Shown here one piece after another: positions 6,801 through 30,800 of a stretch of 64,000 bases of DNA. The translations under genes and the position numbers were made by a program. Origin of the DNA: Styela clava. Lineage: Eukaryota. The stretch lies in the NCBI RefSeq assembly GCF_964204865.1, contig NC_135257.1, forward strand, positions 10,292,001 to 10,356,000, in the 5' to 3' direction. The first letter of the stretch is position 1. Each line of letters begins with the position of its first letter. The notes beneath the pieces were generated by a model, which had not been told where the DNA came from, made no database searches, and saw only the letters and a program-made list of their open reading frames with translations.

Positions 6801-9800
6801 ATTATTTTGATTCCAACAGTGGTTGAAGTATGTCGGATTAATATTAGATTGAATATCTGGTTTTTGGTATATTTCATTCCAAAATTGTTTTGTATAATGC
6901 ATAGAAAAGTTTTATTAGAGAATTTAAATATTTTTTTATAACATGCATTTAGAGCTTGTATTAGTATTGTAGCTCAACAATGAATTATAGTTTCACTCAA
7001 GTTATAAAAATTCAGGTGCAATGCAAAGTGTTTGAAATATTCTTGGCAATGTCAACCTGTGGGAATTTTTTAAAATTTACTGAGCAAATAGCAACAGTTT
7101 TGTTCACATTAGTGACTTATCTTTTATTCATAAAGTAGGTGTAAAAGGTCCCATTCTGTATGATTTCCATTTTTATAGGTTGGTGATGACATGCATCGTA
7201 GATATAGTGAGAGTGAAGCCGACAGAAGAGAAGAAGAACGAACTACTGCTATGAGACAAGGCAGTATTGCTCCTGTAACTACAATGGAAGAAGGTCCATC
7301 GAGGTCATCACAAGAAATGGAAGAAGTTTTTTATCCTTCTGTAAGACTTTGTGTTTGTTGACAAATACTTGATTAATGAATACTTGAAATATTTGATGAC
7401 CCCTGGCAGTAACTAACCACTCTGCTAATGCACTCAAGATTCATTAATTTATCATCAAAGTGTATGTTTCTATTGTATTTAGTGTTAATAATCTTACTTA
7501 CAACATGTTTGTCTATCCAGGATACTCCTGAAGCTACAGATATGGAGAAAGGTTCAGATGATGACAAAGAAAAACAAGAAGATACTAAACAAAAACCCGG
7601 TAATGGTGTGCAACCTAATATTTTTTATCTAGAATTTTTTTAAATTTTCTAGTTTACTCATTGGAACTTGTTTTGCTATTTACAGAGGAAGAGACTCCAT
7701 TGTTTTCCAAAGCTGCTATTCTTCGTTTACTCGCAGAACTTGTTAGCTCATATCCAGCATGTGCTAGTTTCATTGTTTATCATACATATCCTGCTGGTAT
7801 TTCTTCTTTAATAAAACAGGTGAATTAAATATTTTTACGATTGCTGTATTTTAGCACGAGACCATAGATATGCAGTATATTCATGTGAACTTGTTTCAAT
7901 AGCAGTCACATTTTTCAAATACTTGAATGACTCGAGTCATTCGAACGAAATGACTAAATTCAAAAACTCAACTGCCAGAGATTATATTACTGATAATTGA
8001 GTCTTTGAAAAAGTAAAAAAATAAAGATCAAATAATATTTACAACATTGATTATTAATGTTGTATTGAATAAATAAAATATTTAGTATTTTTCCAGCAAT
8101 TCCATCAAACAAGCTATGTTGATGTGTTGAATGTTGTCAATATATGATTAAGTCCTAGTTAGAATTTTAAAGTAATTTTCTGAGATTCAGATAAGACTCT
8201 GATGACCTGTGACTAGGGCCCCTACACCCAACATAGCTATGATTGATTATTTTTATTCTCTTTTTATTCTTTTATTCCATCACAATCCTAAATGTTTGTG
8301 TTCAGGATTGTTCATGTCTCTCATTCATACTACATCATCTTCTACCTTGTGTCTCGAATAAAAAAGACGAATCTGGAGGATCAACTAACAACAATACTGC
8401 AAAGGTACACACTCACTAGTTCCTGTATAGTTCCATTTGATTTACCAGTTTACTATATCCTGGTTAATTGGTTTATTAAAGGTGTCGAAATCTTAAATAA
8501 TTAAATTAGAAACCAGGATTTGCGATATTCAAAATGAGTATTATTGGGGATTGTGAAATCAAAATTACTGCAATCCGGTTTCTGTTAATATGTCAGATTC
8601 TTGCTAAATTATAAATAACCTGTTATTTGCAACTGAATTTGTTTCAGAATATCAGAATGGATAAATCATCAATCAGTCAGTACTATCCATTAAATTGCAG
8701 AATACAGTCCCAAATTTTATTTGATCACATAGATTATAAATCAGTGGTTTTCAAACTGTGGAGCGCGGCCCACATCTAGTAGACAATTTTTTGAGGGGGT
8801 GAAGATAATTAAAAATAAAAATATTTTTTAGATTTGATTGTGCTCGCCTAATTTTGAATATTTACATTTTTTTATTTTAGATATTTACGTTTCATCCACG
8901 TATTCTCAACGTGTTTTTCGAATAAAACATACTTTTGCCTTACTATCTGTTATTTGTAGCTCATTGTTAGCTAGTTATTTTTGAGGCGGGGCACGAGACT
9001 TGACAAATTCCGAAAGGGGGGCGCCGCTTGAAAAGTTTGAGAACCACTGTTCTAAATGAAATGAACTTTGTGTTCTGTAATATTGAATTGAAAATCAATT
9101 TTTTCACAGAACAATCAGAATGATAAAGATTGTTGTTCATCATTGGCAAAAATCTTATTGACCAGCATTGTATGTTGTAATCCTAAATCATCAATACAAA
9201 ATACTGTCATCAGTGAAATCAAATCTTCATTGCACAAGACATTAGTGCTACCTGAATCACAAGGGAAGCATAATGCATTAAGAGCTTTACTAGGTTTGAT
9301 AAGGTGAGATTCTATATTTTGTTTCCGTTTGGGACAACTAAACTAAAAGTTGATTCATAGAATATCAAAGTTTTTTATATACATAGTTCTGAGAGCTCTA
9401 TATAGTTCTATCTCTACTCTTTCTACTTTATTTGGAAGCCAGAGATTTTGATTTAATCAGACATGTAGAAAAATGTAATATCATGATGTCGAATTTTGTG
9501 TATTTTTTGGATAATATTAAGTTTGATTCTGATTTTTTATGGTGAATTTTGAAATTATTTCAGAAAGAAATCATGTATTTGTATATATTATAATGTCTAT
9601 TACTTTCCTCATTTTTTTTTTATCAATTTATGCTTCATAATTATCTTTACTGAAATTATTAATTTTAGTACAATAATGGAATGTGCCACGAAAATGATGC
9701 ATTCGTCAGATGGAGGACCTGTGCTATTACCTACTGATGATCCAATGAGTCTTGCCAGAATCATGATAAGCAAAGGTCTAGGTGCTGATCTTGCACAAAT

Positions 9801-12800
9801 CCCAAATTATATCGATCTTGGATCTCCCAACATGGCTGACTCTGTCAATGCAGCTTTAAAACCGTTGGAGGTAATAAATATATGTTCTTTCTGTTGAATC
9901 TTTTTGAAATTTTTTACAAACATTTGCTTACTTATGATTCAATATTGTGATATTAACAACTTCATTTCCTAGTCCAGTGAGTTGCACATGAAAAGTCTTC
10001 TTATCCAGGGTGAAAAATGGTTTAAATAGGAGCTCTTCTGAATTTTTTTGTTGTTCAAAACGGTAATGTGAAGATCAGCTGTCTGCCAGTCTAAATAGCT
10101 GTTTGGAGTTAACATCAGGAAAATCAGCGCTTGCAATCTACAGTCTAGTTTAGAATCAACCTGCACTTAACATTATACCAGCAGTATAAACTTATGTCTT
10201 CTAATCAAGGTTTTTCTACTTTTGGTTTAGCATCTCTATTTTCAGTACATGGATTATAGTCACCATTTCAGCTTATGGCTTATATTCACCATTTTCAGCC
10301 TATGGCCTTTAACCAGAAGTTTCACCTTATGGCCAATTTTCAACCTATGGCTTGAAACCAGCTTTTCAAAATTATGGCTTATAACCAAAGTTTCATGTTA
10401 ATATGGCCTATAGCTAGCCTTTCCAACTTATTGTCAGCATTTTAAAATTATGGCTTAAAACCGCATTTTCAGCTAATGGGTTATAACCAAAGTTTCAACT
10501 TCTGACTCAAAAAAGCCTTCATCTCATAGCTTATAACCAACATTTCCAACTAATGTCTTTCAATTGTTTTAAATTGCTTGTTGATCAAAACAATTATGAA
10601 TTTCTTACAATACAATGATATAGGTTTCATACCTTTATTTTTATTCAATATTTTATTATTCAATAGACATTGTCAAGACTTGTTCATCATTCATCTGCAC
10701 CAAGCACACCTAAACCATCAGGAGCTGTAGATAAATCAGAAGATCAACAACAGCAACAGCAGCAAAGTTCTTCTCAACCACCTGATGCAGAATCATTACA
10801 AAATGCTGTCATTTCTATAAGAGTGAGTATCTGAAGGAAAATGTTGTATGAGTTTTACATCTGGAATTGAATGTCAATTTTTCATTTTTACATTCAAGAT
10901 TTTTTAAGAAGTTTTCTAATGGTTAGTCATGCAAAGATTCCAATACGTTGATGTTGTTTGTCAGCTAATTATTTGTTTGAATAGTATCATTATTGCCTAG
11001 TTACAGCTTCTGGACGAATGTTCATGTTAATTCAATGCAATTTCTTCGGTTTATTCAGGTTGATGGCGATTCACAGACAAATCGGGAAGAAGGAATGGAT
11101 GAGAGTGTTATTGAATCAAATAATGAAGGTTTCGAAATGGCTGGTGCAGGTGGAAAATTACTTCATATATTTCAATGCGAATATTTGAAATTTTGATGTT
11201 TGTTACTATAACCAAATCATTGTTAATTTTTTTTTTTTTAGGTCTTTTCGTATACAATATTTCATGGGGTAGGCTATGTTGTAGTGTCATTTGATTTGCC
11301 CCAGCCTATTTGGTAATGGCACTTTTTACGTTAAATAAACAAGCTTACTATGCAGAATATTAGTTGCTTGTATTTTTGAATCTTGGGAGTTATTTTTTTA
11401 AGTCTTCAAATCTTATATTTCCTGAAGCTACCCTAACCACAATTTTAAGTTTACTTGAAAAAACATTTCATATGCCAGCTTTTATTTAAATTATGAGTTT
11501 TAAAATTTGGATATACATTTCTATGACCCTGTTTTTGCTTTTCAATACCTGACTGACACCAAATAAGTTGACGCACAAACAGTGCCGAATCTGTTGTGCC
11601 ATGATTATTATCCCATTCCAAACAAAATGCATATCAATAAATATTCATTTAATTTTTAGAAGCTTCATTCAATTCAGTGGCAGATGAAAACAATGAATCA
11701 ATGGAAGATACTTTCCATCTCGTTACAGGTAATTTACTTCTGTTAATTAACATCAGAAACCTCTAAAAACGTTATTTAGCTTCTAGTTCAAAAATTGATC
11801 GATTGAGATACATTGTTATTAAAAATAAATCATAATCCAATATGTGTTTGGATAAATACCAAGTGCATTGTAATGCCAAACATGCACTTGTAACCAGATA
11901 ATAGGTCGTGATTCGCGCAGCTCACTTTATCATTACGCCATCCTATTGGTTTCTTCCACCCAGGGTAAAAATGGAAATCCTATCCTAAATATTGTTTGTT
12001 CACACATTTTGCTAAAAATTTGTAACAACATGTACATACACGCATGATTTTATTAGTGTATTCAAATTTCACCAGCAGAAGAAATCTTAAAAATTGAACA
12101 CTTCACTGCAATGACTATCACATTTATTTAAAATTCCATGTTTAAAACATTAGATTCGGAAGCAACACCACAATTTTCTCATGATCTAATTATGAGTGAG
12201 AGTACCGAACATGATGATGACGTTGTTGTTGACATGAATGTGGAAGGTGATCATCATGTCAATGATGATGACGATGATGATGATCAAGATTCAAGCGGAA
12301 GTGAGGATCGTACGGAGCATAATAATGATGATCAAGTAAAATATAATAGAATTTTATTATCATTCTCATTGTGATTTTTATAGCGATTGCACTTTGATGA
12401 TTCTGACAACTAAGAATACTCATATGTGATTGAAATTTACGAGCTATTCAACTAACTGACATAGTTTTAGGTACGGATATGTATCAAGCTATATAGTGGA
12501 ATAATATTCACTCCAAAGCTGTTTTATATGTAAATAATAAGTTTCAAACACATTGAAAAATTTAAAAATTTCACATTTTATAGAATAATTTTAGACTGCA
12601 GTAAACGTATGAAATCTATAACTTAAACTTTCAAATAGTTTGCAAAAGTCATTTCATAGTTTTCAACCAATGGTCCCAATCCTTTTCCGTCTTTTCCAAT
12701 TTTTATCCAGTTATATCTCCCTGTTGGAAACAACTGCTCTAATGCGATCCTGCAGTAGTAATCACTCTGTGTGACTAGGACACACTCATCTTAAAAACTT

Positions 12801-15800
12801 TCTGTGGGGAAATTTTCTCATGGGCTACTATAATAGTTTCAACTGTATCATAGCAAACGTCTGTTTTCAGGATCTTGAAGATGAAGGATCTGAGATGGAT
12901 GATCTGGATGAAGATGATACAGAAGAAGAAGATGACGATGATGATGACGATTCTAACATGAATCGATTAAATTACGAAACATTTGTTTACGATTTATTGA
13001 GCGAAACAACGGATAATAATATTCTCCTACAACTTGAAGATGTCTTGAGTGGTAGGAATACTATTGCATTCTTAGTAACGATTACATAGTGGGATAATTT
13101 GATTAATTGTTATTGGACACGATGTGGACCTATGGAACATTTTGCTGAATTGTTGTATTTTTGGGGAAAAACATTGCTTTTGTAGACAATTGAAGAACTG
13201 ATTTTCAATTTTCTATACTCAAAAGATGGAGATAGTCGCTAGACAGCTATCACTTATTTTTTTTTAAATTTTCATCAGGATCCTATATTTCACCCAAAAT
13301 TTTGTTTTCAATTTTTTTTCACTTTATAAAGATCAGCAAAATTTAGGGTAAAACAACTGGAACCAGAGGAAATTTGAAAAAATGCAAATGTATTATCTTT
13401 TTAGAAAAGCGTTCATCTTTAACCTCTGAAATTTTTAAATTGGTCTACTAGTTGAGAAAGAAAAGTGAATTTTTGTAATTGTTATATTATCAAAAAAAAT
13501 CGATAACATCAATTCGACAATAATTTTTTGTAGGTCCGCATTGTGTTTATTGAATATCGAGGTATTGTCAGGGTATCTACTAGCAATGTTCTTGATAATG
13601 TTTTTGCTGCTTCCCTTTTATCTTGATATTCTTTTTTCTTTCTCAGATGGTTTTGCTGGAAGGATGCCTCAACTTGCAGGAAATGCAAGGACTTCGCAAC
13701 TTTTTGCTATGCCTGTACCTATAGGTGATGATAATACAACTGCTGCTGCTAGTGGTAAGTTGTTTTTTGTTTATATTGTACTATGCACTTAGTTCATTTG
13801 AGTTACTCCAAGGAGTGTATAAGCTTAGAGTTTCGTGGTTAAATTTAGACTTTCTCCAGCTCTAGTGGTAGTATACTCAAGGTCCTGACGTTGATTAAGA
13901 AATAATTTTGAATCAATTTAAGGTTTCATTTTTGTTAAATATGCCATATTACCCAAGCAGTTGAAAAGAATCAGTTCAACGATACATGCACAAGTTTATG
14001 TGCAGTTTACAACTTTTTCACAGCATGCCAATCTACAATGGTGCCATACTACTATATTTTAGGTTCCAGATTGAGGTAAATTTTGACTCTATTTCCCAAC
14101 TTTGAGAAAACTGATTTTTGACCCCAAGTTTTATTCAATTGACTGGGGAAAACACTTACTCATTATTTTAAATTGAATATTTCAGCTTCGATCATTAGAA
14201 TTTTTAAATTTGGACTTCACAAAATCTGGAATTTCTGCATCAGCTCAGACTTTCAGACTAATGCTGTATTGTGGAAATATGACTCAAAAAACATGCTAAG
14301 CCAAGACTCTAGATTTTAATTCCACCGTCTTGGATGTGTTTTCAATGTTTAATGTGTTTTATCTCTATATTTTCAAGGTTTTGCTTCATCATGGTTTATT
14401 CCGACCACTCACCCAATGTTGACAAGAGCAGGTGGAAGAACTACTTTGCCTGGTGGTACGTCTGCATCTGCAACATCCAATGCACAAGCCAGAAACACTT
14501 ATCCCAATAGTGTTACAGCTAATCGTAATGGACAAACGTTGCAGATAGAATTCACCAGCAATTCTACTGAAGCCCCACAGATATTAACAAGGTTGTGAGT
14601 GTTGTTTTTGAATGTACTTTCTAACGGCAAAATGTTAACTGACCTCGAAAAACTTCAATCTTTAGAGTTAAATATATGTGAAAAATTATGCTGTGATGAA
14701 TTTTTGTATACAATAATTTTATGTGTTAATACTTAGGTACTTTTACTAATTTTTATTTATGAGATGGTAGATTTTTAATCATTGGGTCCTCGAAATCAAA
14801 GTCACCTGCTCAAATTGCGATAAATTACTTTAAAAACTTTGATATAACTTTTCTAGAGTACCTACATCGGTGCTTGTAAAGAATGGTCCTGGCCTCCAGA
14901 ATACACTTGCTTTACACTCGCACTCGCTTTAAATAGATATATGTTGGCTACTTTACCAGTAACAGCAACCATACTGCTACAACAGATTATTGGTACTTGG
15001 CACTTTTTTTTTAAATGTACTTTTCATTCAGATTGCTTGGTCCAACTGCTACTGCTGATGTTCTTCAGTTGTCGAATTCCTTATACAATGAAGGTGGAGG
15101 TCATGCTCAATTACTTGTTAATTCAAGTAATATTCGTCTTTTGCCGCTAAGCAGAGATATTGCTGATAGTGGATTACAGGTAATTGATTTACACTAACCA
15201 TCACATGTGATTACAATAGGAAATATTGATTCTAAAAAAGCATTCGAAAATGTGATATCTATTAATGTGGATGGACCAGTATAAGATGTCCTAGTTTTTT
15301 TTCAAGTCATATTTATATGGCTATCGCTCTGAACAAGGCTCTGCAGAAGCAGAAACTGTTAGGTAAGGATCTGGTATAGTTGGAAGGACTGGGTTCTGGT
15401 TCAACATTACCTACCCAATTTATTACACCCTGGGTGAAGTGATGGACATAGGATTTGAACCCATGATTTTAATCTAAAAACCATCATAGTTAAGTCTAAT
15501 GCTTGAACCACTAGGCCACATCAGCTATGGATGTTGGGTCAAAGATTTGATATTAAATTAAATAATCCACACCTAATTATTTACAAATTCACAATCATCT
15601 TTGAGAAAAATGAATCTTCCTCTGCACACTCAACTGGGAATAATAGTTAAAAAAACAAATTTGTCTTGGTATCTCTCTAGAAATTCAAAACAGTAAGTAA
15701 GTAAAAGTACAGTCACTCATCTAATATTATTTAAATTCTAGTTAAATGGTTTCAGATTTACTGACAGATGGTTTTATTTTTCAACATAGAATCACATCAT

Positions 15801-18800
15801 GTCAAGTGGTCGCAATGGTACTGGATCTGGATCATTAAGTGTACCTACTGCTATCACGAGATGGACACAAACTTGCGAAGTTCTGGAGCCAGACAGTACG
15901 CAATACTGCTTGCTAGGTAAGCTTATTGTTCTGGTTCTTTTTAATCACACCTCTGATTACCCTGCATGGGTTTGCAGGTTTGAATCCTGTGGGAGATAAT
16001 TATGTGTGAGATAGTTGCTGTGCTCTTTGCAATCGGGGTGGTTGACATAAACGCTGTCAGGTTACGTCTTCCTCCATCATCTAACTGGTTTACCATTTTT
16101 GCCAAGGACTTGCAACCCGGCGATAAGCCCTATAATTGAGTTTTCTTGTCTTCTTGTCTTCTTGTCATCTTTCCTTTCCCCTGGTGTAAATATGAAAATC
16201 CCTCGGTGATTGTTAGACAACACCTTATTTTTAACGATGTATCTGTAAACATAGGTTTACGACAAGAGATCATTGATCATCTTGAAGAACGAAGAAATTC
16301 TGATATCGAGGAACGACGTGCAAAGAGAGCGCAAGATAAAGAGAAAGAAGAAAAAGAAAAGGCTGCAAAAGAAGAGTTGAAGGAAAAAGATGGAAAAGAT
16401 AAAGAAACAGAAAATGCAGAAAATATTGACACACCGGCTTCTACTCCTGACGAAGAACGAGAGGTTTGTATTGTTAGGCATTGTAGGGAATGCCAAAATG
16501 TTATATTCAAACCACACAAGATTGCCGAGCCTTACCAATCTGTATTAGAAGAGAGGCAGTTTGCTAGGCGCTCCAGAAATATGTGTTCCAATATGGAGGT
16601 TACTATTTGTTTTCGCCTACTCTACATCAAGTTGTGTAAGGGGACTGAAACCTATGAAACCTGAAATAAGGAAAATCGGAATAAAATTATGGCCCAAGCC
16701 TAACTTGGTACACACACTACGGGTCTGCTGTATCCCATGTAGCGAGTGCAGCTAAGAATACATAGAACAAACTAGACATAGCTCTGCATTGTTTCAGCTT
16801 CTATTTTGAATACGTTCAAATTGATTCAAAATTTGATCTCATATCAATGGCGGTCAAGTTCCTCAATCAGTGAGATTACCTTTGGTTTTAATTTTTTTTT
16901 ATGTTGAATTTTCAGACGCAAATGGACTCTGGAGATGCCGGCATATCAACACCAACTAATACACCTATTGCTACTCGACCTGAATCTCCTGTCAATCAGC
17001 AACAAGGTTTGTCAAAAACAGTTGCTATGCATAATATGTACAGAATGAGGGTAGTTTTTACTTTTACAATTTTTACCTATATGAAGTCTGCTGTGTGAGG
17101 TAGTAGGTTATGCAGTTGTGCTTTGACGTATTATATTTCCGAGCAAGGAAGATAACTGCATAATCTGAAATCTCTCTAGCGTACTTTACTTTCATCACGC
17201 CGTTGGGTTATGCCCATATTCAATTTACTTTTGTTAGAGGCCGAGTTATAAAAACTTTCAAATTCAATTTAGTATATGCATTTGGACTACTGGGGATATT
17301 TTAGATCTTCAATATAAGACTTTGATTTTGATGCATTATGTGAATAATATTTTTTGCATATTAATACTCTTAATCCACTAATACTGATAATGGTAATCTT
17401 ATCACTAATAGAGTAGATAAGTAACTAATTAGATAAGTTTATTTAAATAAACTATCAAATAAGTAGACTCATTGGACTTAAACCTATGATTTCCAACTTG
17501 CAATGCCAACATAGTTGAATTACTACGTTAATCTTAGATCACTGAATATATGCAATCCATGCTTGTTATGAGTATGTTGATTTAAATATTTTTGCTGTAT
17601 TGCCGGGTTGAGGTAGTAGGTTATGTAGTGATTGAGCTATAATACAAGGGAGATACTGCCTAACCTTTCACCTCCACCCTGTAATCAGCACTATCATCTT
17701 ATTAGAGGTTGCAAAGAGAAATACTTAGTTAGTAAATAAACATAGTATCAGTTTCGATCGCTCTGTTAGGTGAAATTATATTTAACTTTGCCTGATCTGG
17801 TAATATATCTTTTATATAGAGATATTCGGCTTATGTATGTAAATATCTGCTTTACAAGTTACTTTTAATTTGTGATAGATAGTTGTTGGTGCATTGTGCT
17901 TAGAGCTAGGAACATGCTCATCATCACTGTGCTGTGATGAAATCCTGTGCGAGATCGTTGGTTTGAATCCTTTTCACTGCCGTAGGGTTGTTTACAGAAC
18001 TGGTCAGTTACTGCTTCTTCCACCATAAAGTTCATGCATTTGAAATAAATAACGAGTTAACTATTCCCATACCTGACATGGACTGGTAACCAGGCGAAAG
18101 TGTCTGGTTTACCTATATGCTGTCTTATTTCTAACTTATGGAAATCCTGTCCTAATAATGTATAACCAAATTATTAACTACACATAACCCATTTTAAAAT
18201 TATTCAAATCACATTTTAAATGTTATGCTACATCACCTATCTAACATTGATATTACCGGTAGGTTTCGATCTGGGCACTCAATGAGCTGAGGTAGTAGGT
18301 TATATCAGTTGTATTATACCACCAAAAGGAGTTAACTGTATATCCTACTAGCTTACTTATTTTGTCTACAATCAACAAATAAATGAAGCAAATATTTGGA
18401 CATTGTTGAAATGAGGTAGTGGTTTATGCAGTTGTGTGAATATACATTGCACAGGTGTTAACTGTATAGTCTACTTTCTCTTTCAATTATTGTCATTTTC
18501 ATCGCAAAAGTTGCAGTGTGCTCTAGAATAGATGTCCTCGTTTGCAGTTTCATTTTTTGAGTTTCCATAACGTTCATATTTATATCTTGAATAATACTTG
18601 ATAAAAATCAGCCCCTATCATTTCTAGTTATCAATTGTAGTTTTGAGTGTCAAAAGTTGTTTGCTTTCGATATACTGCCTAAAGCAAAAGATAAAACAGT
18701 AAATAAATTTTGGCAGCTCATGCTGACCATCGCCCATCTGTTGTGGTTGGCAAACTAGGTTAATTTAGAAAGAAACCCTTACGTCCCTACGTCCTTTATG

Positions 18801-21800
18801 AAATCGTTTGCCTTTGTTTCAGTGACATCGTCTGTAGAAGTAGATGCAATTGATGCATTGCAACAAGCAAGTTCGTCTCTCCAGTCTGTTTCACTCGAAT
18901 CAAATCATGATGACGAAGAACATGAAACGACCGAAGTTCAATTGCAAGATAGTGATGCAGGTGAAGCAATGCAACAAGATGATGAACAAATAGTTGAAAC
19001 TACACCTGAAGAGAATGCAAGTATGTATAGGATTTCTTGATTGATAAAGGTTAATTCACTGTTGTTGACATTGGTTAATAAATTCTTGTGAAGACTAAAT
19101 AAAAATGAACTTAGGAACCAAATTTTTATATTGGATGAAAAGTTTTTTCATAATACAAATATGCTGAATTGTGACTCCTATTTATATGGAGTTTTCGCTT
19201 CTGAGCACATAATTTAGGCCTTCATTTTGGTCTGCAGTAAATTTATTTCAAATATCTGAAATCATAACTAATTACAAATAAAGTCCTAAAAAATTTCAGA
19301 CTTCATTTTGGTCTGCAGTAAATTTTTTTAAATATCTGAAATCCAAACTAATTACAAATAAAATCTTAAAACACTACATACCACATTTCTGTGGGCTATA
19401 TGGCATTTGTTTCTTGTGTGCACTGACGTCATCAAAATTAAAAATTACACATCTTGTGACGGTTCTGCGCTCATGTTTGTAGCAATCTGGTGGTCAGGTG
19501 AAGAGGAGTCTGTGGTACCGGTAGTCTACTTATCCCGTACTACTTTGTTTTGGTCTTTGTGACCATGTATTTTAGTGTCGCTCTCTAGTTAATTATAATA
19601 ATTTTTTTTTCACTCAGACCAAGAAAATCAACCTACAATTGCAGATGATGAACCATCATCAAATGTTATAGTACAAGAACCATCAGAACAAGAAATAACT
19701 TCTGCAACTGATACTGAACAACAAGCTGCAGCTGGTTAGTTTTCACTCTTATGCTACAAATATTCTCATTTTAAGCTTCATTTCTTGACAACTAATGGAG
19801 TATAGGGAGTATAAACTAGTAAAATATGAACCCTTGCTAGAAATTATTTGCAACGAATTCACTATGGTGTTTTCTTCGCTTGTTGATCATTACTTACTGC
19901 TGTGTCACCTATTTAAGACACATATATAATGGGATATATATTAAGGAATTTCGTTTAACATCTCTATAAATCAATGCATTGGTCAATGATGTTTAGTAGC
20001 TGTATTTTGGTTAGGACGAATTCTAAATATAACCGACCATATCAAAAAATGTTAATTATCCATTTTTCATTTTACTGACTGCTTAAATTGTTATAAAACC
20101 ACATACTAATCTACACACATAATAACAAGGTTGTGAAGCAATATATTGTTATATTTCTTTATTTACATTAGCAGGGGCAGAAGCACAAGCATCTTCAGCG
20201 AACAACGCTGCCCAATTGAGCAGTGAATTCGAAGGAGTTGACCCATCTTTCCTTGCTGCTTTGCCTGATGATATTCGACAGGAAGTCATAAGGTAGATAG
20301 ATTACTTCTGTTACTGGTTTTAGTATATTCTTAGTTTCTGCAATGGAAGGTAGTTTCACAAGATTTCTGTCATTACCTTTCCGGACTTTTCTTTTAGACT
20401 CTATATTTAGACTGAAAATTTTAGAATCACATTTGCTGTTATAATGCATTTGATATCGATATAAAACTTTTTGTAAATTTGTTGTGAAAAAATTTTTCCG
20501 CTCATATTTTGTATCTTATTACCTGATGAATAAACACACATACAGTTTTAGTGTGAATTAAGCTAAAAAATTAGAAGAGTTCAAGTTATAAATTTGTTTC
20601 ATCTCATTTTTCCGTTCAGGGAGCAACTCAGTAGACAAAGTACAGGAAGAACAAGTACATCTGAGAACCAAGCGAGTGGTGTTAGTCCTGAATTTCTTGC
20701 TGCGTTACCTCCGTCTATACAACAAGAAGTATTGGCACAAGAACGAGCAGAACAAGTACGTACTATGCAATTTTCATTGTATATTTTTTTACCCTAACGT
20801 ATTCTATAAACCACTATGAAATAATTTTGTCCAATTTTGAAGAATACTCCCACATATTTCTGTTAAAAATCTCATGATTGTACTTGATGCATATAGATTT
20901 GCCGCTTCAGAAGTGTGTGTATCAATATGGAGGTAGCTATTTTGTTCTCCTACATTTTTTCAAGTTGTGTAAAAGAACTGAAACCTATGGGAAGGGGGTA
21001 TATTCATTTGGCTAACACAGACAGTCCCCAAACTCGTAATCGAACCAAAATAAGGAAAATCGGAATAAAATTATTGCCTAACCCTAACCTGGTACACACA
21101 CTACGGGAGTACTGATTTCCATATATAAAAGTATAGCAGAGCGACTTATTTTCAAAACTCAAAAACTTATATGTTCACCTTACATTTAATGGCACAAGTT
21201 GGTATGTTAATCCTTGATCTTTTTTTCTTCTAGGCTAGAGCTGCACAACAACAAAGCACAGCCAATGATCCAGTGGACCCAACTGTCTTCATACAAACAT
21301 TACCGAGCAGCCTACGACAATCCGTCTTAGCTGATATGGATGATTCACTTGTTGCCGTTCTGCCAGCTGATTTAGCTGCTGAAGCCCAGGAACTCAGAGC
21401 AACCATGGAAAGACGTCAACAAAGATATTTTCCAGATCCCAGATTGTTTTCAAGAGCACACAGTAATATACTTCAACGCACAAACATGCCATCTCGATTC
21501 CGTTATTCTGGAAGCGGGCCTGCGGCATGGGGAACCATGCCAGGTGGCAGAAACAAGAATCAAAACGGTTCACAGAGTGTGAAAATACAAGTTCGTCAAT
21601 TGCTCAATCACGATTCGCTAGCATGTCTGCTCTTACTGTTATTCGTTGAAGAACCTCGCTTGAATATGACAAGATTACACAGGGTGTTACGAAATCTCTG
21701 CTTTCACATACCGACCCGATATTGGCTAGTTAGTACTTTGATTGCGATTTTACAACACTCGCAAGAAAAGCAAGAGCAAGAGAAGGAAGAAGCTTCTACC

Positions 21801-24800
21801 ACTGAAGAATCAATGGATTACAAAACAACTCCAACCACATTGGTTAAACAAAAACCGAATTTGAAGCAACAGCACACGCCAGTTACGTTCGCCCCCGATC
21901 ATCGAAACACTTCTTGGTTGTCAATTAAGCTTGACGCAGCACTCGGCTCACGAGCCAGTATTTTTAAAGTTGTTAAACCCAATGTACCTTCTGACAGTGG
22001 TGGAGCAAGGAAAAAACGGAACGAAAAGAGGAGCCAATCAGGATGCAGTGTTTATATCCATCCTCAAGCTTCGCCTGTTATTTGCAGACAGACGATAGAC
22101 ACTCTTCTCATGATTGCGAAATTCTTTCCACAACATTTTGTTAATGCTTCTCTTCATCGTACTAAATCTGATAAGGTATCTGACAAACATCAGCCAATTG
22201 ATACTGATTTCTGGGATGTTTTACTGAAATTGGATTTTCTCTCTCCCAGTTCAGATTTGCCAAAGAAAAGTATGTATTTTATTTGTAGATTCTCGAAGTA
22301 ACCATTTTTGATCGCTTAAAGATTTTTTAAACAAATTTGTACTAGAAGTTTTTTTTGTGATCAAAGAATTCATTATATGAGAGGAAATATTAAAATAAGT
22401 CCATTTTGAGGCTTACAGTACTTAACCTACATAAAGGTACATCCATGTTGTACAATCGTTCCATATGCCTAAAGTATGCTTGGTTGCATGCAAGCCATGA
22501 TCGATATATTGAATTTTTGTTTGACATTTTACAAATTATATGTGTATATGTGCATTATATGCAAATCAACTATAGAACATGAAAAACGGCTCATTAGGAT
22601 GTTTGGCATTGAGTTGGTTTTTATACGGGCTAATGGATGTTTGATGTTTTTTAACCTCATATTAAACTCAATAATAATTATGGTCAGAAACTTTGTACTT
22701 TTTTTCCCATAGTCATTATGAATTTTCTCTTCTAACTTTAGGTGCCGCTGAAGATAAGCGTGTACAAGACTTGACCAGCAGTGACATCGAATTAACATGT
22801 ATGGGTGAACTTTTAAGAATGCTCGCTCATCCTGTTTTGAAACGAAGTCAACAGTTGACGGATCGATTATTGAGACTTTTAGCCCAAATATCTCTTCATC
22901 TCCCAACTCAATCCAAATCAAACATCGGAGATGCAGGTCCCGAAACAAATAAAAAAGATCCCGAGAAAGACAAAGAAGACTCTCAGAATGAGTGAGTACT
23001 TGGATGTTATCTATGCATAAAAATTACAATATTTTGCATGCATCAGAAATTACCACATCAGAAATATATATATGTAACATAGCAAAGTTTGAAAAGCCTG
23101 TTTTACATCTTCATATGTCCATTGGAAATAAATCAAAGAGATATTTAGTTTTGCATGTTATTCGGTATGACGCTCTTTTCCGCATCCATGTGAATTTCTA
23201 AAATCTGTACTACAAATAACTTGTCTTTAAATATTCCTCTTTAACTACTTAGTGACTATGTTATTTAGTATGCAGAGAATAGTATGGTTTTATTTTTTTT
23301 ATTTGACCCGAAATATAATTTCTGTGATCGATATATAAAATTTTTGTGCTCATGGTTTCATTTTTCTTTTTCAGAGAAGCTACCACACCTGAGGGTAAGT
23401 CCAGCACTGCAACAATGGGTGCCAGAGCATGCACAAGTTACACAAGTACTGTAGGTCAAGCTACGATGGATACAAAAACAGCAACTACAAGTATATATCA
23501 GTTATACTAAAGTGGCAGCACCTTATCAAGCTTTACCTATATTATTTGGTAGCCATTTCTAACAGGCCACAATTTTATGTACTATATTTTATGGGACTAC
23601 GAGGCGCACTGTCAATAGTTTGCTTGGATTGGGTTTTTTTCATATATAAGGTGCAACCGGCACTGGTACTGGTTGTGTAGGCAACTACCTGTGACTACTA
23701 TGTGACTGAATTTTGAGGAAAAAAGGTACTCCCGTCGTATGTGTACCAGGTTAGGGTTAGGCCATAATTTTATACTAATTTTCTTTATTTTTCTATTTGT
23801 ATTACGAGTTCGGAGACTGTCTGTGTTAGCCAAGCAATATACCCCCTTCCCATAGGTTTCAGTCCCTTTATACATCTCGGTGTGAAGTAGGCGAACAAAA
23901 TTAGTTACCTTCTTATTGGTACACATACATCTGGAGTGCCAAAAAAAACATTTTCAAAAAAATTACTCTCCAATTTTGTTATGCCTGAGGTGTTTTATAT
24001 CCGTTAATTGAGTGATTGTTATCCTTGAGGTTTAGAGATTGCTTGAAATTTATTTACTATTATTTGTTTTACAGGTTCAACTCAAAGTCACGGTTCGATA
24101 TCGTTTCCATCATTATCTCATGACAGCGTTGCTACAACACCACTCGAGAAAGAACTGGAACTTGCTGTTCAAATTTTAACAAGCCATGCATGTTCTGAAG
24201 ACGGACTCGAGGATGCCACAACATTGCTTTTCCATTTGTCAAAAACTCAGCCTGTTTTAAGGCCAATTATCATCAGATTGCTTCTGCACGGTGAGAAAAA
24301 TATATTGATAAATTGTCATCTCTCTACAATGGCTGGACATTTTCGAATACCTGATGATTTCAGAATAAAATATGTTTTTCTAGATAATTGATATTTGAAT
24401 TAATACGAAGATTTAATTGTATGTGACTTTTTTGTTGTAATGGGTTCTCCAGATACATAAATTTATTATTAAACATAGAATCCATCACTCAGTCAGATCG
24501 CGGATTTGTCATACACAATAAGAAACAAGTTTCATCAATAACTCAATAGAAAAAGAGTCGTATATCATAATTGTATTTCAAAAATATACCTAAAAAAATT
24601 GAATTGCCTTCAACCTTGGCGAAACAAAAAAACAAGATGCCGGCGAATTGGAAATTTTGTGTAAACCTATTCAAAAAATTTACTATTCGATTTGAATACT
24701 CAGCCCTATTCATTACAGTCTCTATTACACTGTATGTCAGCAGTTCCTCATATAATCAACCTCAGACTAGTTGGTCCACAAAAAAAAATTTGGTTTTTAG

Positions 24801-27800
24801 GTAATATTACGTCTCAATATAATGTTGTAAACTAGCGTCATGAAAGCTTGCAGCATTGAAATACATTGGCGACAACTAGCGCTTGGCCTCGCATTAATAA
24901 AGCGGCAAAAGATTTATCACAGCGACAAGAGCAAAAAACACTATGTATTTTTTTTTTGAATAAAGTTAAATCAGGATTTTAAGCTTGATGGGGAAAAATC
25001 TTTTCTTAATGATTTGGCAGTCTGGGTTGTGATTTGCAGGCCGTCTGTTCCACACCCCTGGTCTAAGGACTGTGCCCCAATGATTTCATCCATATACACA
25101 CTTCCACATATTCAGGTGCTCAAGAAATTGGTCAAAAACTATGTGAACAAGTGATAACATTGTCTGAAGAAATGAATCAGTATAATCAAGAACATACAAT
25201 CAATCAACAAACATCGAGTGCTCTTGGTACTTCTAGTAGCCTACAACCTCCCCAACAACCACAAGCTGCATCAGCCATACAATCTCAAACAGCTGGAGCT
25301 TCATCGTCAGCAGCATCTAGTAGCAGGTTGGTACTAAAATTAGTAACATTGGTGCTATTAATATATATTCGGTTTGCTCCATCTCCGTTGCAGCATTCCC
25401 TCTACAAAGAGAAAGTTACATTTTGACAAGACTCCACACAACTTGGTCGATGAAATTTAAAACAGGTTTTACTCAAGTTATGAAAATATACTGCGGATTG
25501 GCTGGTGGTTTAAGCATTGAACTTAACTATGTTGGCACCACTAGTTCAGAATCTCAGGTTCTGTCAGCATTCCCATCCCCTCACCCAGGGTATGTTAAAT
25601 AGAGTAGGTATTAGGAATTATTCTGATCTTTCCAACGACTCTTTAAAGGTCAGTGGCTGCTTTTATAAATTCTTATTCCGAATGTAAGATGTGAAAAACA
25701 GGAAAAATGAATTGGATTTTGTGTATCGTTAAGAACTTCATTTGGTGTAGACTTGACCGAAGTGACCAATTCTCGACGACTAAATTAGACTTTTACCGAG
25801 CACTTTAAACCAATGTCCTTGACCTTGTTGTTGATTTAACTCGATAAAGATGGATATTGTTAATGTAGTTTTATTCATTGGCTGTTATCAATTTATTCAT
25901 GAACATCAATTATAAAAATTACTCATTTTTATTGTATTATTTCAGGTACGATCCCACTCAGCTTTTTACTTTATCAGGAAAAGTAAAATTAAAAAGAACT
26001 GGCAAGGAATTGCAACTTCCCATCATGCAAGTACTAACAAGCAAAACGTCTAATCAGGTAACATATTGGCTATCTGATTATCTTTTGTTAATTTATGCTT
26101 TTTAACCCAATCGTTATTTACTAATTCGTAATTCCACCCTATAATTCTTTATATGGTTTCAGTAGCAGTTCATCTCATATTTTTATGCCCACAGACTGCC
26201 GTGGTATTTTAGAGTAGTACTGTTTTTATTCTAACGTAGAGAACACAACCGCGAGTAGCGTTGGACACAAATTAAAGTAAAAGTCAACTACTAATGAGCG
26301 CGTAATCACGGCGACTGTTTCAGAAGGGAATGGGATTTCCAATCTTTGAAACACCCCCTTTTGAAAATCCTGGCTGCGCGCCTGCCGGTACCCTTTATTA
26401 CGAGTGAGTGTGCGCATTTATTGCGAGTGAGTGTGTATGATTTTTCATTGAGTAAATTCCTTATATACAAATCAAGCCCTGAAGTATGCAAAATGCTAAG
26501 TGCATTTTTTGTATAGTGTAATACAATTACAATAAAACTAGATATATTGTGATATTATCTTCAAAATATTCTCCAATGTTTCGCAGGCTTTCTTTCTTCG
26601 AATACTCAAAGTAATTATACAATTACGAAAAAGTATGAAAGATGAGAAACAAGACGTTGATCAACGTTCAAGGATTTCTGGTCCACAAGGAAGAGGTTGG
26701 ACAAGAATGTCAGGTAATTTTTTTTTTAGAATTATTATATCACATCAACATTTTTTTCAAGATTTTGGAAAAATTTTCAAGGGGTGTCATTTAGTATATA
26801 CTTATATATATATATACTGTATATGTATGTATACAAGAATACCTCGGTAGTCGGACAATTCGATAGTTGACCAGAAAACCTTGAAATAAAAGTTGTTGTT
26901 CAGGTACACATTTTGTTAATATTTTGTGTATTTTAAAATGCGCAAGGACGATTTAAAATATTTTCCATTGTTTCGTTTGGCAAAAAAGTCAAACAAAACG
27001 GTGGACAAATAACAACCCGGAACGAATTATGTTTTACTACCGAGGTATCACTGTATATATATATCTATATAACTGCTCCACAACATCTATGACATTTATA
27101 TTTTTCTTTGTGTATGGCAATTTATTTTCAAATAGATCATTATGTTAACTTTTGGATACTGGAATTGAGAGACTACAATTTCTTTGTTCAAATTTATCAA
27201 CCTACCCGATTTCTTAAGTTATATATGATGGCGATTTCTACTAACTTACTGATCAAATTTCAAGCTCAATATTTCTATCCTGTAATTCCAACATATTTAT
27301 AGGTAGGCCAATGCACATAACTTATTGTCATATTGAATGGACAACATCGGATTCGGGAATCCGTATTATTTGCTTTTAAATATCATTGTTACCATTTCAG
27401 TTCTGTTTCTTTGAATCTATTGAAATCAAGCTGATTGTTTGTTGTATTATATTTTATCTGTGATTTTCAAGTCAATTTTCCTTCTTTTTTAGCTGCTACA
27501 TCAGCTATTCGTAATGCTTTTGTGCAAATATCTCAAGAGGAACAAGATGTCAGTAATCAAGCAATGTTAAATCAGGCTATTTCATCTGATAATGCAACAA
27601 ATTCTGGTGCAACAACATCAACATCTGGTGCTGCAGCTAGTTCAGAGAAAATTGAAAAAAAGACTGAAGATGAAGAAGGTTGGCAGCTTTTATTTTACTT
27701 GCTTCTGTTTTCTCAGTCATAGTTTATTTATTTAATATATTAATAAAAAGAATCGGGTTGCAAGTCATTTTTGGACAGGTTTGATCAAATTTCAAAGTTG

Positions 27801-30800
27801 TTAAAAAATAGTTTGTTTTAAAATTTCATGATTTTTGTGAAATTTTTTCTGTATCGCATTGAATACTGTGATGTACTTGTGGTCATGGAAGTGCATTGAA
27901 TTAAAAGTGGAATTCTGTATCAGATCCCAGAAGTCTGTGTGAACAATTGCAGTTGGAATCATTGTGGGATAATCTTGGAAAATGTTTGAAACAATTGGAA
28001 GAAAGCAATGATCCACATGCTGTGCTGGTACTCCAGGTAATAACCATTTCAAAACTTTCACTCGATCTGTTATTATGAATAAATAGTCAGTTTAATTGAT
28101 TAGATAGCTAGTCGACAAATTTTAAGTTCTTATTTGGCAAAATTGTATGGATCAAATGGAAAATGTAGTTGAACATTATATCAATATTAAAAATGTCGCA
28201 GAATTTCATTTAAATGAAATTTGAGATTAAAGTTTCAAAAAATGTATTTTGCGAAGAAGGATCATATAAATTACAATTCTATTGTAAAAGCTATGCAGTA
28301 AGATCATAATTTACAGAATTTTTTAATTTTTTGAAAAAGAATCTAGCATGTTTGATGATTTTGCTGCCAAATTAATCTATTTGGGATATTCGGAATTAAT
28401 TAATTTGACAATAAATTTCTTGAATAACTAACTATTCAATCAATTATAGACATTTATGAGAAACTTTTTCATGATCTAAATCAGGGGTGTGCAACAGTCC
28501 TCCCGTGGGCCACAACCCGGCCCACTAAGCCATTCGGATTTTTCCCCATCAAGCATAAATTCGAATCCGACAGTTTATGTTTGAAAAGTCGCTCACATGG
28601 GTTAATATACATAATGTTTTTTGCCGTTGTTGCTGCAATAAATCTTTCGCTGTTTTGCCAGGTGTTTACTGTAAGGCTAAGCAATAGCTGCGTTCTCTTC
28701 TCTTGCCTTTTTTTGTGTGGTCCGACTAGATTTCCGGAATTGGCTATATGGCTCTCCAACAAAAAATATTGTACACCCCTGATCTAAATACTTAAACTTC
28801 CTATGTCACATTACTGAATTTTGCACCCACAAGTATTATATTATTCAGTGGCCAAATAGTTCTATCGAAAGCCTGCAATGGCATAATGATGTTGATATTG
28901 TGTGCTGTAGTATTGAATATCTATTTACATCAATCCCAGCCGACTGTAGAAGCTTTTTTCCTGGTGCATGCCTCCAAACAAAATGCAACCAAATCAGCAG
29001 ATGTGCATAAGGATGGTGAATCACAATTATCACATTTGGATCTACAACCTCTTTCTCCATCTCTAAGTTCAGGTTGTTATTTTTTGATATTGGATATTTC
29101 TGTTACACAAATATTTATCATATGGGCATGTTCATATGGTTTGAATAGCAAATGTCTGAGTTGAGTGAATTTCACATCTATGTGTGCCATTTCGAATTTC
29201 ATTCTTATAATAGTGAAATAAAGTAAGGGTTATTATAAAGCTGTGTGATCTTTCCCCTTCTGCCTATATTATTACTATTGGACAATAACAATTGTGCGCA
29301 TGATAGCATAGTGGTCAAAATGTTTGACGTTCGCATCGCAGTTTTTTTACCCAAAGTTCAAATCCCATGCCTTCCACCTCGCTTCAATTGGTTGGGCAAT
29401 GCCGAATTGGAAAGATTTTAGTTCTTTTAAAAATAGTGAGTTACTTACATATCATTAGATATCAGTGGCCTCTTGCACATTTTTTTTTAGGGGCAAAAAT
29501 TAGCGTCTTATTTGTGTAGTTTCTAGCTGTCTGTTCTGGTTCACTTATAATAGTTAAATATTCAACTTTGATTCCTATTTTTCAGAAGTAGCAACTTTAC
29601 AACAATCACAAAGTTCAGTATCCAATGATGATAATTTGAGTAGCGAAACAAAGAAATTCCTTGACTTTGCAGGTAAGTGATCTAAATTAATTGAAGCAAA
29701 CTGCTGATCTATTATACATATTATGTTAAATAAGCGCTTGAATATATCATATTGATATGCGTTAGAGAATTTTTGATGTGGCGTCAAATAGTGATATACA
29801 TAGCTATATAATTGGACATTTAAAGATTTGGTCCAGAATTAATGCAGAAAACCAATTTCTGAACGCCATGTTGTCATTTTGTTTATTTTATGCAATTTAT
29901 TTAACTTGGTGATTTCAGTTGTAAAGTTTATTGAGAAGCCTTAAAAATTAGTTTCATTATATGCTCAAATTTGTTAGGGAGAGAATCTATCTGAATTTTG
30001 ATATAAAAATTAGGAATTTGGTTATTGTCACGTGTCTGTTTTTAAGAAAATAAATATATTTGTTTGCCTACTGTTTTCATTTCAAGTTTTTTGAAGTGTT
30101 TTGTACGAATTTAATTTTAGACACACATCGCAGCATTCTCAACCAGATACTGCGTCAATCCAATGTGCCATTGACAGAAGGTCCATTCTCTGTTCTTGTA
30201 AATCACACAAAAGTACTGGATTTTGATGTTAAAAGACAACATTTCAGACAAGTGAGAAACCACTGGTCCAATCCTGGTTAAAATATTTTAAGATAACAAA
30301 ATTAAATTTGTAACAGGACTTTATGAACACTCTGTATTATAACATGACTATAAAGATGCTATTAGTCATCTTGAATTAATTGCTCATTAATTTTAAATTT
30401 CAAATAAGAGTTATTTATGCCATATCTAGTTTGGTGAAGTAAAAAAAAATTGGATAAACTCCAATTAAAATAAAACAATCTCTGTTAAGATATATTGTCA
30501 CTCTGACAATGAACATATTATAACATGACTAATAAGATGCGATTAGTCCATCTGAATTCTTGTCAACTTTTGTCCACTCATATAAATCTTATAATATATT
30601 ATCAGGAACTTGAACGATTGGAAGAGAATTCAATGTCTAGAAGAGATGACATTGCAATAAGAGTTCGAAGACAACATGTGTTTGAAGATTCATTCCGTGA
30701 ATTACACAGAAAATCAAAAGAAGAATTGAAAAGTCGTTTGTACATTGTTTTCGAAGGAGAAGAAGGACAGGTAATGCATTATTCGGAGTATTAGTATAAG

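What the first reader, a model, noticed from the sequence alone, without database searches (positions are those of the whole stretch)
17007..18822. Four-member let-7 microRNA cluster hidden in the longest HUWE1 intron
Seen: four UGAGGUAG-seeded 22-mers (17096, 17609, 18288, 18412), each folding back on a 3' arm. All are sense to HUWE1 and lie in a 1816-nt intron, the longest HUWE1 intron in the window. I saw no miR-100 or miR-125 sequence, so this is a let-7-only cluster rather than the ancestral miR-100/let-7/miR-125 type. Known: mammalian let-7f-2 and miR-98 reside in a HUWE1 intron. Inference: the host-gene/miRNA coupling predates vertebrates, with independent tandem expansion in this lineage. 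The intron lies between the RWT(Q/E)xC block and the UBMs, which may be the same position as in mammals.
Basis: partly seen in the sequence, partly recalled or inferred. Interest (0 to 1): 0.9.

Follow-up and report, generated by a model that had tools for sequence, protein, structure and literature searches.

The report
Sea-squirt let-7 cluster in HUWE1 intron
Four genuine-looking let-7 microRNA hairpins sit in one intron of the HUWE1 gene of a sea squirt, but the same arrangement was published for Ciona in 2012 and the same four let-7 genes for Halocynthia in 2017, so this is a well-kept known locus, not a discovery.

Summary
The seed TGAGGTAG occurs four times in the window, all on the + strand inside one GT..AG, phase-1 intron (17007-18822). 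All four sites match Rfam let-7 (54.5, 52.5, 39.7 and 35.2 bits). All four fold into hairpins (z -3.6 to -4.6) and are the four most stable hairpins in the intron. Seven stem pairs carry compensatory changes.

The host gene is HUWE1, on the + strand from 2091 to 35021. The intron lies between the RWTxxC block and the first UBM.

The genome (377 Mb) is a tunicate: it holds the tunicate-specific GT2+GH6 cellulose synthase gene.

Hertel et al. 2012 described four let-7 genes in an intron of the Ciona HUWE1 homologue and dated this second let-7 locus to the vertebrate-urochordate ancestor. Wang et al. 2017 list four clustered let-7 genes in Halocynthia roretzi, in the same order. Three mature sequences are identical and the fourth differs by one base. 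The expansion to four is therefore old and shared among ascidians, not specific to this lineage.

Expression could not be tested, and neither could identity of the intron with the mammalian one.

The parts
16916..17006 (+). HUWE1 exon upstream of the let-7 intron (30 codons plus 1 base; low-complexity S/T/P linker)
   Evidence: Acceptor TTTCAG at 16910-16915, open frame, donor GT at 17007. Lies between the RWTQTC exon and the UBM exons.
17007..18822 (+). HUWE1 intron, 1816 nt, GT..AG, phase 1, 33% G+C, holding the four let-7 hairpins
17090..17180 (+). let-7 hairpin 1 (5p 17096-17117 UGAGGUAGUAGGUUAUGCAGUU; predicted 3p 17156-17176; long 38-nt loop)
   Evidence: Rfam RF00027 35.2 bits, E 1.4e-04. 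Fold -32.1 kcal/mol, z -3.83. Mature sequence matches H. roretzi S93_68698-68609. 3p coordinates.
17603..17681 (+). let-7 hairpin 2 (5p 17609-17630 UGAGGUAGUAGGUUAUGUAGUG; predicted 3p 17656-17676; GGAG in the loop at 17649)
   Evidence: Rfam 39.7 bits, E 9e-06. Fold -32.2 kcal/mol, z -3.67. Mature sequence matches H. roretzi S93_68526-68445..
18282..18360 (+). let-7 hairpin 3 (5p 18288-18309 UGAGGUAGUAGGUUAUAUCAGU; predicted 3p 18336-18356; GGAG in the loop at 18328)
   Evidence: Rfam 54.5 bits, above the gathering score. Fold -27.6 kcal/mol, z -3.56. Mature sequence matches H. roretzi S93_68361-68283.
18406..18486 (+). let-7 hairpin 4 (5p 18412-18433 UGAGGUAGUGGUUUAUGCAGUU; predicted 3p 18462-18482)
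   Evidence: Rfam 52.5 bits, E 3.5e-09. Fold -28.7 kcal/mol, z -4.55. One base differs from H. roretzi S93_67805-67726.
18823..19020 (+). HUWE1 exon downstream of the let-7 intron (acidic linker; 3' end predicted at donor GTATGT 19021)
   Evidence: Open frame from 18823 and donor motif. The exon end is a prediction.
15802..15957 (+). HUWE1 exon with the RWTQTC block (human HUWE1 about aa 2638-2677)
   Evidence: PDB human HUWE1 match, E 0.006; tblastn of long HUWE1 proteins
20216..22301 (+). HUWE1 UBM exons (UBM1 about 20216-20293, UBM2 about 20615-20779, UBM3 plus following region 21237-22301)
   Evidence: Pfam PF14377; PDB human HUWE1 aa 3056-3401, E 9e-64; tblastn
2091..35021 (+). Part of the HUWE1 host gene inside the window (WWE-region exons to the end of the HECT domain)
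   Evidence: 28 colinear + strand tblastn islands against 13 long HUWE1 proteins

Best explanation
This is the tunicate copy of the 'homogeneous' let-7 cluster that sits in an intron of the E3 ligase gene HUWE1 in tunicates and vertebrates. Four let-7 precursor hairpins lie in the sense direction within a 1.8-kb phase-1 intron. The most likely mechanism is as follows. RNA polymerase II transcribes them as part of the HUWE1 pre-mRNA. The Microprocessor (Drosha/DGCR8) crops each hairpin from the intron, and Dicer trims the loop. The 5' arms, which all carry the seed GAGGUAG but differ at positions 10-22, are loaded into Argonaute and repress let-7 target mRNAs. Shown here: the sequences, the hairpins, the family match, compensatory changes in the stems, the host gene and strand, the tunicate origin of the genome, one-to-one correspondence with the published Halocynthia cluster, and a separate let-7/miR-125 locus on another contig. 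Inferred only: co-transcription with HUWE1, processing, and function in developmental timing.
For: Four seed-bearing hairpins were confirmed. They are the four most stable 90-nt windows of the intron on the + strand. In the alignment of the five let-7 hairpins of this genome, 7 of 25 stem pairs keep pairing through changes on both sides. The 5p arm is almost invariant, while loops and flanks are not. The host is HUWE1 on the same strand. The genome is a tunicate: GT2 and GH6 domains lie 2 kb apart on one strand at C9:16177301-16180164. A whole-genome let-7 scan finds only these four plus one copy on C4. H. roretzi likewise has four clustered copies plus one solitary copy; the order is the same and four of the five mature sequences are identical. 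The Ciona HUWE1-intron cluster of four is described in PMC3384580. The C4 locus carries the canonical let-7 and, about 520 nt downstream on the same strand, a miR-125-like hairpin. That is the mixed cluster expected from Hertel et al.
Against: Hairpins 1 and 2 score well below the Rfam gathering threshold, at 35.2 and 39.7 bits against 53.5. Co-transcription with HUWE1 is assumed from position and strand only. The first hairpin starts just 89 nt after the donor site, and I did not examine whether that affects splicing or cropping.
Confidence: 0.9

Rival explanations
1. The cluster is a transcription unit of its own, with a promoter inside or upstream of the intron. It merely resides in HUWE1, and its expression is uncoupled from the host gene.
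For: Nothing measured here supports it. It stays open because let-7 is strongly stage-regulated whereas HUWE1 is a broadly expressed housekeeping ligase (general knowledge). Also, 89 nt between the donor site and hairpin 1 leaves little room for independent elements, but the upstream introns could hold a promoter.
Against: The hairpins are in sense orientation inside a spliced intron. The same host-gene relation is kept in Ciona and vertebrates. This is most simply explained by dependence on host transcription, with stage control applied after transcription.
Confidence: 0.15
2. Tunicates and vertebrates each captured let-7 copies in HUWE1 independently, in different introns, so the shared host gene is convergence and not inheritance.
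For: The flanking exons cannot be aligned with vertebrate HUWE1, so identity of the intron is unproven. The copy number differs: four here against two in mammals.
Against: Hitting the same host gene twice by chance is improbable. Hertel et al. assign two Ciona copies to the two vertebrate subfamilies of homogeneous clusters. A crude interpolation from published hg38 coordinates places the human miRNAs in the last 40% of the coding region, compatible with the linker before or around the UBMs. The coordinates are miR-98/let-7f-2 at 53.556-53.557 Mb and Gly1743 at 53.584 Mb. The error is several hundred residues.
Confidence: 0.08
3. Some or all of the hairpins are decaying, non-functional duplicates or chance hairpins.
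For: Hairpins 1 and 2 have low Rfam scores. There are no expression data.
Against: The mature 22-mers of hairpins 1-3 are identical to those of H. roretzi and hairpin 4 differs by one base, while the spacing between copies differs between the species. The stems show compensatory changes. Four seeds within 1.4 kb is far beyond chance.
Confidence: 0.03

Closest known systems
Ciona intestinalis / C. savignyi homogeneous let-7 cluster (cin-let-7a-1, b, c, a-2) in an intron of the HUWE1 homologue (Hertel et al. 2012, PMC3384580)
   Same: Four closely spaced let-7 hairpins and no mir-100 or mir-125, inside an intron of HUWE1. A separate mixed let-7/mir-125 locus lies on another chromosome.
   Different: A different ascidian with a 377-Mb genome. 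Here the first and last copies differ at two positions of the mature RNA, whereas the Ciona names (a-1, a-2) imply identical mature sequences. No mir-1473/mir-100 was found next to the solitary let-7. I did not compare Ciona sequences directly.
Halocynthia roretzi let-7 cluster on scaffold S93 plus solitary let-7 on S648 (Wang et al. 2017, PMC5399378, Table 1)
   Same: Same number (4+1) and same order of mature types. Four of the five mature sequences are identical and the fourth cluster member differs by one base. Precursor lengths are similar: 90/82/79/80 nt there, 91/79/79/81 nt here.
   Different: Spacing differs: starts are 172/165/556 nt apart in Halocynthia and 513/679/124 nt apart here. 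The passages I read in that paper do not name the host gene. That paper did not find miR-125, whereas this genome has a miR-125-like hairpin.
Vertebrate cluster F: let-7f-2 and miR-98 in an intron of HUWE1
   Same: A let-7-only cluster, sense and intronic in HUWE1.
   Different: Two members instead of four. Identity of the intron was not established here.
Ancestral bilaterian mir-100/let-7/mir-125 cluster
   Same: Same let-7 family and a polycistronic layout.
   Different: The window cluster has no mir-100 or mir-125. The descendant of the ancestral cluster in this genome is the C4 locus.

Membership tests
let-7 microRNA family (Rfam RF00027) | Mature 5p RNA beginning UGAGGUAG (seed GAGGUAG at positions 2-8) | tested here: met
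   All four 22-mers
let-7 microRNA family (Rfam RF00027) | Precursor hairpin of about 80 nt with the mature RNA on the 5' arm, more stable than shuffled sequence | tested here: met
   z -3.6 to -4.6; full-length model alignment 1-84 for all four; compensatory pairs
let-7 microRNA family (Rfam RF00027) | Covariance-model score at or above the curated gathering score (53.5 bits) | tested here: inconclusive
   Hairpin 3 scores 54.5 (met) and hairpin 4 scores 52.5 (just below). Hairpins 2 and 1 score 39.7 and 35.2 (below), though with E of 1.4e-04 or better in the 4-kb search
let-7 microRNA family (Rfam RF00027) | Expressed 5p and 3p reads of about 22 nt with 2-nt 3' overhangs (MirGeneDB-type criteria) | not testable with these tools
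Homogeneous let-7 cluster in HUWE1 of tunicates and vertebrates (Hertel et al. 2012) | Cluster made of let-7 paralogues only | tested here: met
   No other miRNA family between 16000 and 20000 at E of 1 or less, apart from antisense mirror hits
Homogeneous let-7 cluster in HUWE1 of tunicates and vertebrates (Hertel et al. 2012) | Located in an intron of HUWE1, in sense orientation | tested here: met
Homogeneous let-7 cluster in HUWE1 of tunicates and vertebrates (Hertel et al. 2012) | A separate mixed cluster (mir-100 or mir-1473 / let-7 / mir-125) elsewhere in the genome | tested here: inconclusive
   let-7 and a miR-125-like hairpin lie on C4. No mir-100/1473 within 8 kb upstream
Homogeneous let-7 cluster in HUWE1 of tunicates and vertebrates (Hertel et al. 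2012) | Same HUWE1 intron as vertebrate let-7f-2/miR-98 | tested here: inconclusive
   The intron lies in the linker between RWTxxC and UBM1. The flanking exons do not align, and no vertebrate gene structure was obtainable
Tunicata (origin of the genome) | Cellulose synthase gene with GT2 and GH6 domains fused (established as tunicate-specific among animals) | tested here: met
   PF13632 at C9:16177301-16177801 (60.8 bits) and PF01341 at C9:16179895-16180164 (35.4 bits), same strand

The most novel reading that the evidence does not exclude
The let-7 intron of this ascidian may be the very same HUWE1 intron, in the same linker between the RWTEEC block and UBM1 and in the same phase, that holds let-7f-2/miR-98 in vertebrates. 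That would be a host-intron/miRNA association kept for over 500 million years. In addition, the four ascidian paralogues are fixed in sequence and order between this genome and Halocynthia, and the four-copy layout is also reported for Ciona. Their distinct 3' halves may therefore be sub-functionalised rather than redundant.
Probability: 0.35. Interest if true: 0.35.

Novelty: already known. Interest (0 to 1): 0.15.

Why it matters
The locus illustrates how stable an intronic miRNA/host-gene pairing can be across tunicates and vertebrates. It adds another ascidian in which four of the five mature let-7 RNAs and their order match Halocynthia exactly. It changes nothing in the current picture of let-7 evolution, which already includes a HUWE1-hosted let-7 cluster in the tunicate-vertebrate ancestor. 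The only open point of some interest is whether the intron itself is orthologous to the mammalian one.

Tried and rejected
**Expression**
I used only references in local folding, alignment and scripts.

**Vertebrate or other genomic loci for intron comparison**

**Human intron position from papers**
- Six searches and several look-ups gave only the hg38 coordinates of the two miRNAs and one HUWE1 variant. That allows no more than a crude interpolation.

**Residue-level alignment of the two flanking exons**
- I aligned each exon separately against the RWT..UBM1 linker of the three long HUWE1 proteins in which both landmarks could be located. None scored above shuffles.
- An apparent 'TQMD/TQME' match seen by eye is not supported.

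**mir-100/mir-1473 next to the C4 let-7**
- Rfam mir-10 found nothing in the whole genome, and the Rfam scan of 10 kb found nothing.
- The best 22-mer, with 6 mismatches at L008:6173, does not fold into a hairpin.

**Other checks**
- Antisense hits (mir-3596, let-7 on the - strand) are mirror images of the sense hairpins and were rejected as genes.
- ARAGORN found no tRNA in 16000-20000, despite a T-arm-like GGTTTGAATCC near 17960.
- No other convincing hairpin exists in the intron.
- HUWE1 shows no sign of let-7 autoregulation: there is no seed match in the 3' UTR after 35021.
- The species was not identified by my own tests beyond 'tunicate, not Ciona-sized'.
Full report
**Observation.** The 8-mer TGAGGTAG occurs four times in the 64-kb window, at 17096, 17609, 18288 and 18412, all on the + strand. 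Shuffles expect 1.1. All four sites fall within 1.4 kb.

Each site opens a 22-mer that pairs with a downstream arm. The four stretches fold at -27.6 to -32.2 kcal/mol, with z-scores of -3.56 to -4.55 against dinucleotide shuffles.

The Rfam let-7 model (RF00027) aligns end to end with all four. It scores 54.5 bits at 18282-18360 (above the gathering score of 53.5), 52.5 at 18406-18486, 39.7 at 17603-17681 and 35.2 at 17090-17180.

In a sliding scan of the intron, these are the four most stable 90-nt windows on the + strand. Nothing else there looks like a miRNA precursor. Minus-strand hits (mir-3596, let-7) are mirror images of the same hairpins.

I aligned the four hairpins with the genome's fifth let-7. 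Seven of 25 stem pairs keep pairing through changes on both sides. The 5' arm is nearly invariant, while loops and flanks vary.

**Intron and host.**
- The intron runs from GT at 17007 to AG at 18822, which is 1816 nt at 33% G+C.
- The upstream exon (16916-17006) ends on the first base of a codon. The downstream exon supplies the other two bases, so the intron is in phase 1.
- Exon translations match human HUWE1 in the PDB. The RWTQTC exon (15802-15957) aligns to about aa 2638-2677. The large exon 21273-22301 aligns to aa 3056-3401 with E 9e-64.
- Pfam finds UBM domains in the exons at about 20600-20800 and at 21273.
- Thirteen long HUWE1 proteins from the representative search give 28 colinear + strand tblastn islands from 2091 to 35021. 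These run from the WWE region to the last HECT residue.
- All gaps between conserved exon islands are 1254 nt or less, except three. Those three contain further acidic or weakly conserved exons. 'Longest intron in the window' is therefore plausible but not proven.
- Exons were searched one by one by reference.

**Whose genome.** The assembly has 377 Mb in 380 contigs, and the window is C9:10292001-10356000. A GT2 domain (60.8 bits) and a GH6 domain (35.4 bits) lie 2 kb apart on one strand of C9. That is the fused cellulose synthase known among animals only from tunicates. The genome is too large to be Ciona. An earlier follow-up of this scan calls it Styela clava (note s1-817513); I did not test that.

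**The rest of the let-7 complement.** A whole-genome scan with RF00027 returns the four window hairpins and one more, at C4:18984277-18984356. Its mature sequence is the canonical UGAGGUAGUAGGUUGUAUAGUU.

About 520 nt downstream on the same strand is a well-folded hairpin with z -4.59. Its 5' arm reads UCCCUGAGACCCUAAAACGUGA, a miR-125-type sequence. I found no mir-100/mir-1473 within 8 kb upstream.

So the window cluster is let-7-only, and the descendant of the ancestral mixed cluster sits on another contig.

**What is already known.** Hertel et al. 2012 (PMC3384580) state three relevant points:
[quoted passage not shown] A mixed mir-1473/let-7d/mir-125 cluster lies on another chromosome, and C. 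savignyi is very similar.
- Vertebrate cluster F (let-7f-2/miR-98) is expressed from a HUWE1 intron.

Wang et al. 2017 (PMC5399378, Table 1) list four let-7 genes on scaffold S93 of Halocynthia roretzi. In transcription order their mature sequences end ...UAUGCAGUU...UAUGUAGUG...UAUAUCAGU and UGAGGUAGUGGAUUAUGCAGUU. A solitary canonical let-7 lies on another scaffold.

The window has the same four types in the same order. Three are identical, and the fourth differs by one base (GGU for GGA). The C4 copy is identical to the solitary Halocynthia one. Precursor lengths also agree: 91/79/79/81 nt here against 90/82/79/80 nt there. The spacing between copies differs: 513/679/124 nt here against 172/165/556 nt there.

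The four-member cluster is therefore an old, conserved ascidian feature and not an expansion of this lineage. I found no paper describing it specifically in Styela.

**How it most likely works.** I infer that the four hairpins are transcribed within the HUWE1 pre-mRNA. They would then be cropped from the intron by the Microprocessor, diced, and their 5' arms loaded into Argonaute.

All four share the seed, so they share seed-type targets. They differ at positions 10-22, which could tune 3'-supplementary pairing.

Hairpins 2 and 3 carry GGAG just before the 3' arm (17649, 18328). In other animals that motif is bound by LIN28. Hairpins 1 and 4 lack it. This hints at differential post-transcriptional control but was not tested.

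**What stays open.** The question is whether this is the same intron as in mammals. The two flanking exons do not align with the linker of vertebrate or other HUWE1 proteins (scores at the level of shuffles). Papers yielded only the hg38 positions of miR-98/let-7f-2 and of one HUWE1 residue. A linear interpolation from these puts the human miRNAs roughly at residue 3150, give or take several hundred. That is compatible with the same region but proves nothing.

**Verdict.** This is a real, well-preserved let-7 polycistron, correctly read by the first stage. It is the orthologue of a locus published for Ciona (2012) and Halocynthia (2017). Interest is low.

Noticed in passing
G000:C4:18984277-18984356 (L003:1501-1580) and L003:2094-2195: A fifth let-7 with the canonical mature sequence. 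About 520 nt downstream on the same strand lies a miR-125-like hairpin (5' arm UCCCUGAGACCCUAAAACGUGA, z -4.59) that Rfam did not call. No mir-100/mir-1473 was found within 8 kb upstream. Wang et al. 2017 did not find miR-125 in Halocynthia.
   Followed up: partly
G000:C9:16177301-16180164: GT2 (PF13632) and GH6 (PF01341) domains 2 kb apart on one strand. This is the tunicate cellulose synthase gene, used here only to place the genome among tunicates.
   Followed up: partly
window 20900-21115; also 4065-4281(-), 16569-16741(+), 23726-23943(-), 31029-31246(-), 33762-33973(+), fragments near 2600, 39500, 44400: An interspersed repeat of about 220 bp (77-86% identity between copies) scattered through HUWE1 introns on both strands. 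Its spurious ORFs read '...[20 protein letters not shown]'.
   Followed up: no
window 17649 and 18328: A GGAG motif at the 3' end of the terminal loop of let-7 hairpins 2 and 3 but not 1 and 4. It may mark LIN28-sensitive versus LIN28-insensitive members.
   Followed up: no
window 17424-17464: An A+T-rich palindrome of about 42 nt inside the let-7 intron between hairpins 1 and 2 (self-match on the opposite strand, 86% identity).
   Followed up: no
window 17940-17975: A T-arm-like GGTTTGAATCC with a neighbouring short hairpin. ARAGORN finds no tRNA. It may be a decayed tRNA-derived element.
   Followed up: partly
window 10670-13089: HUWE1 linker exons that are extremely acidic or low in complexity (runs of D/E and Q). 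They do not align with other HUWE1 proteins, which makes exon mapping by homology incomplete there.
   Followed up: no
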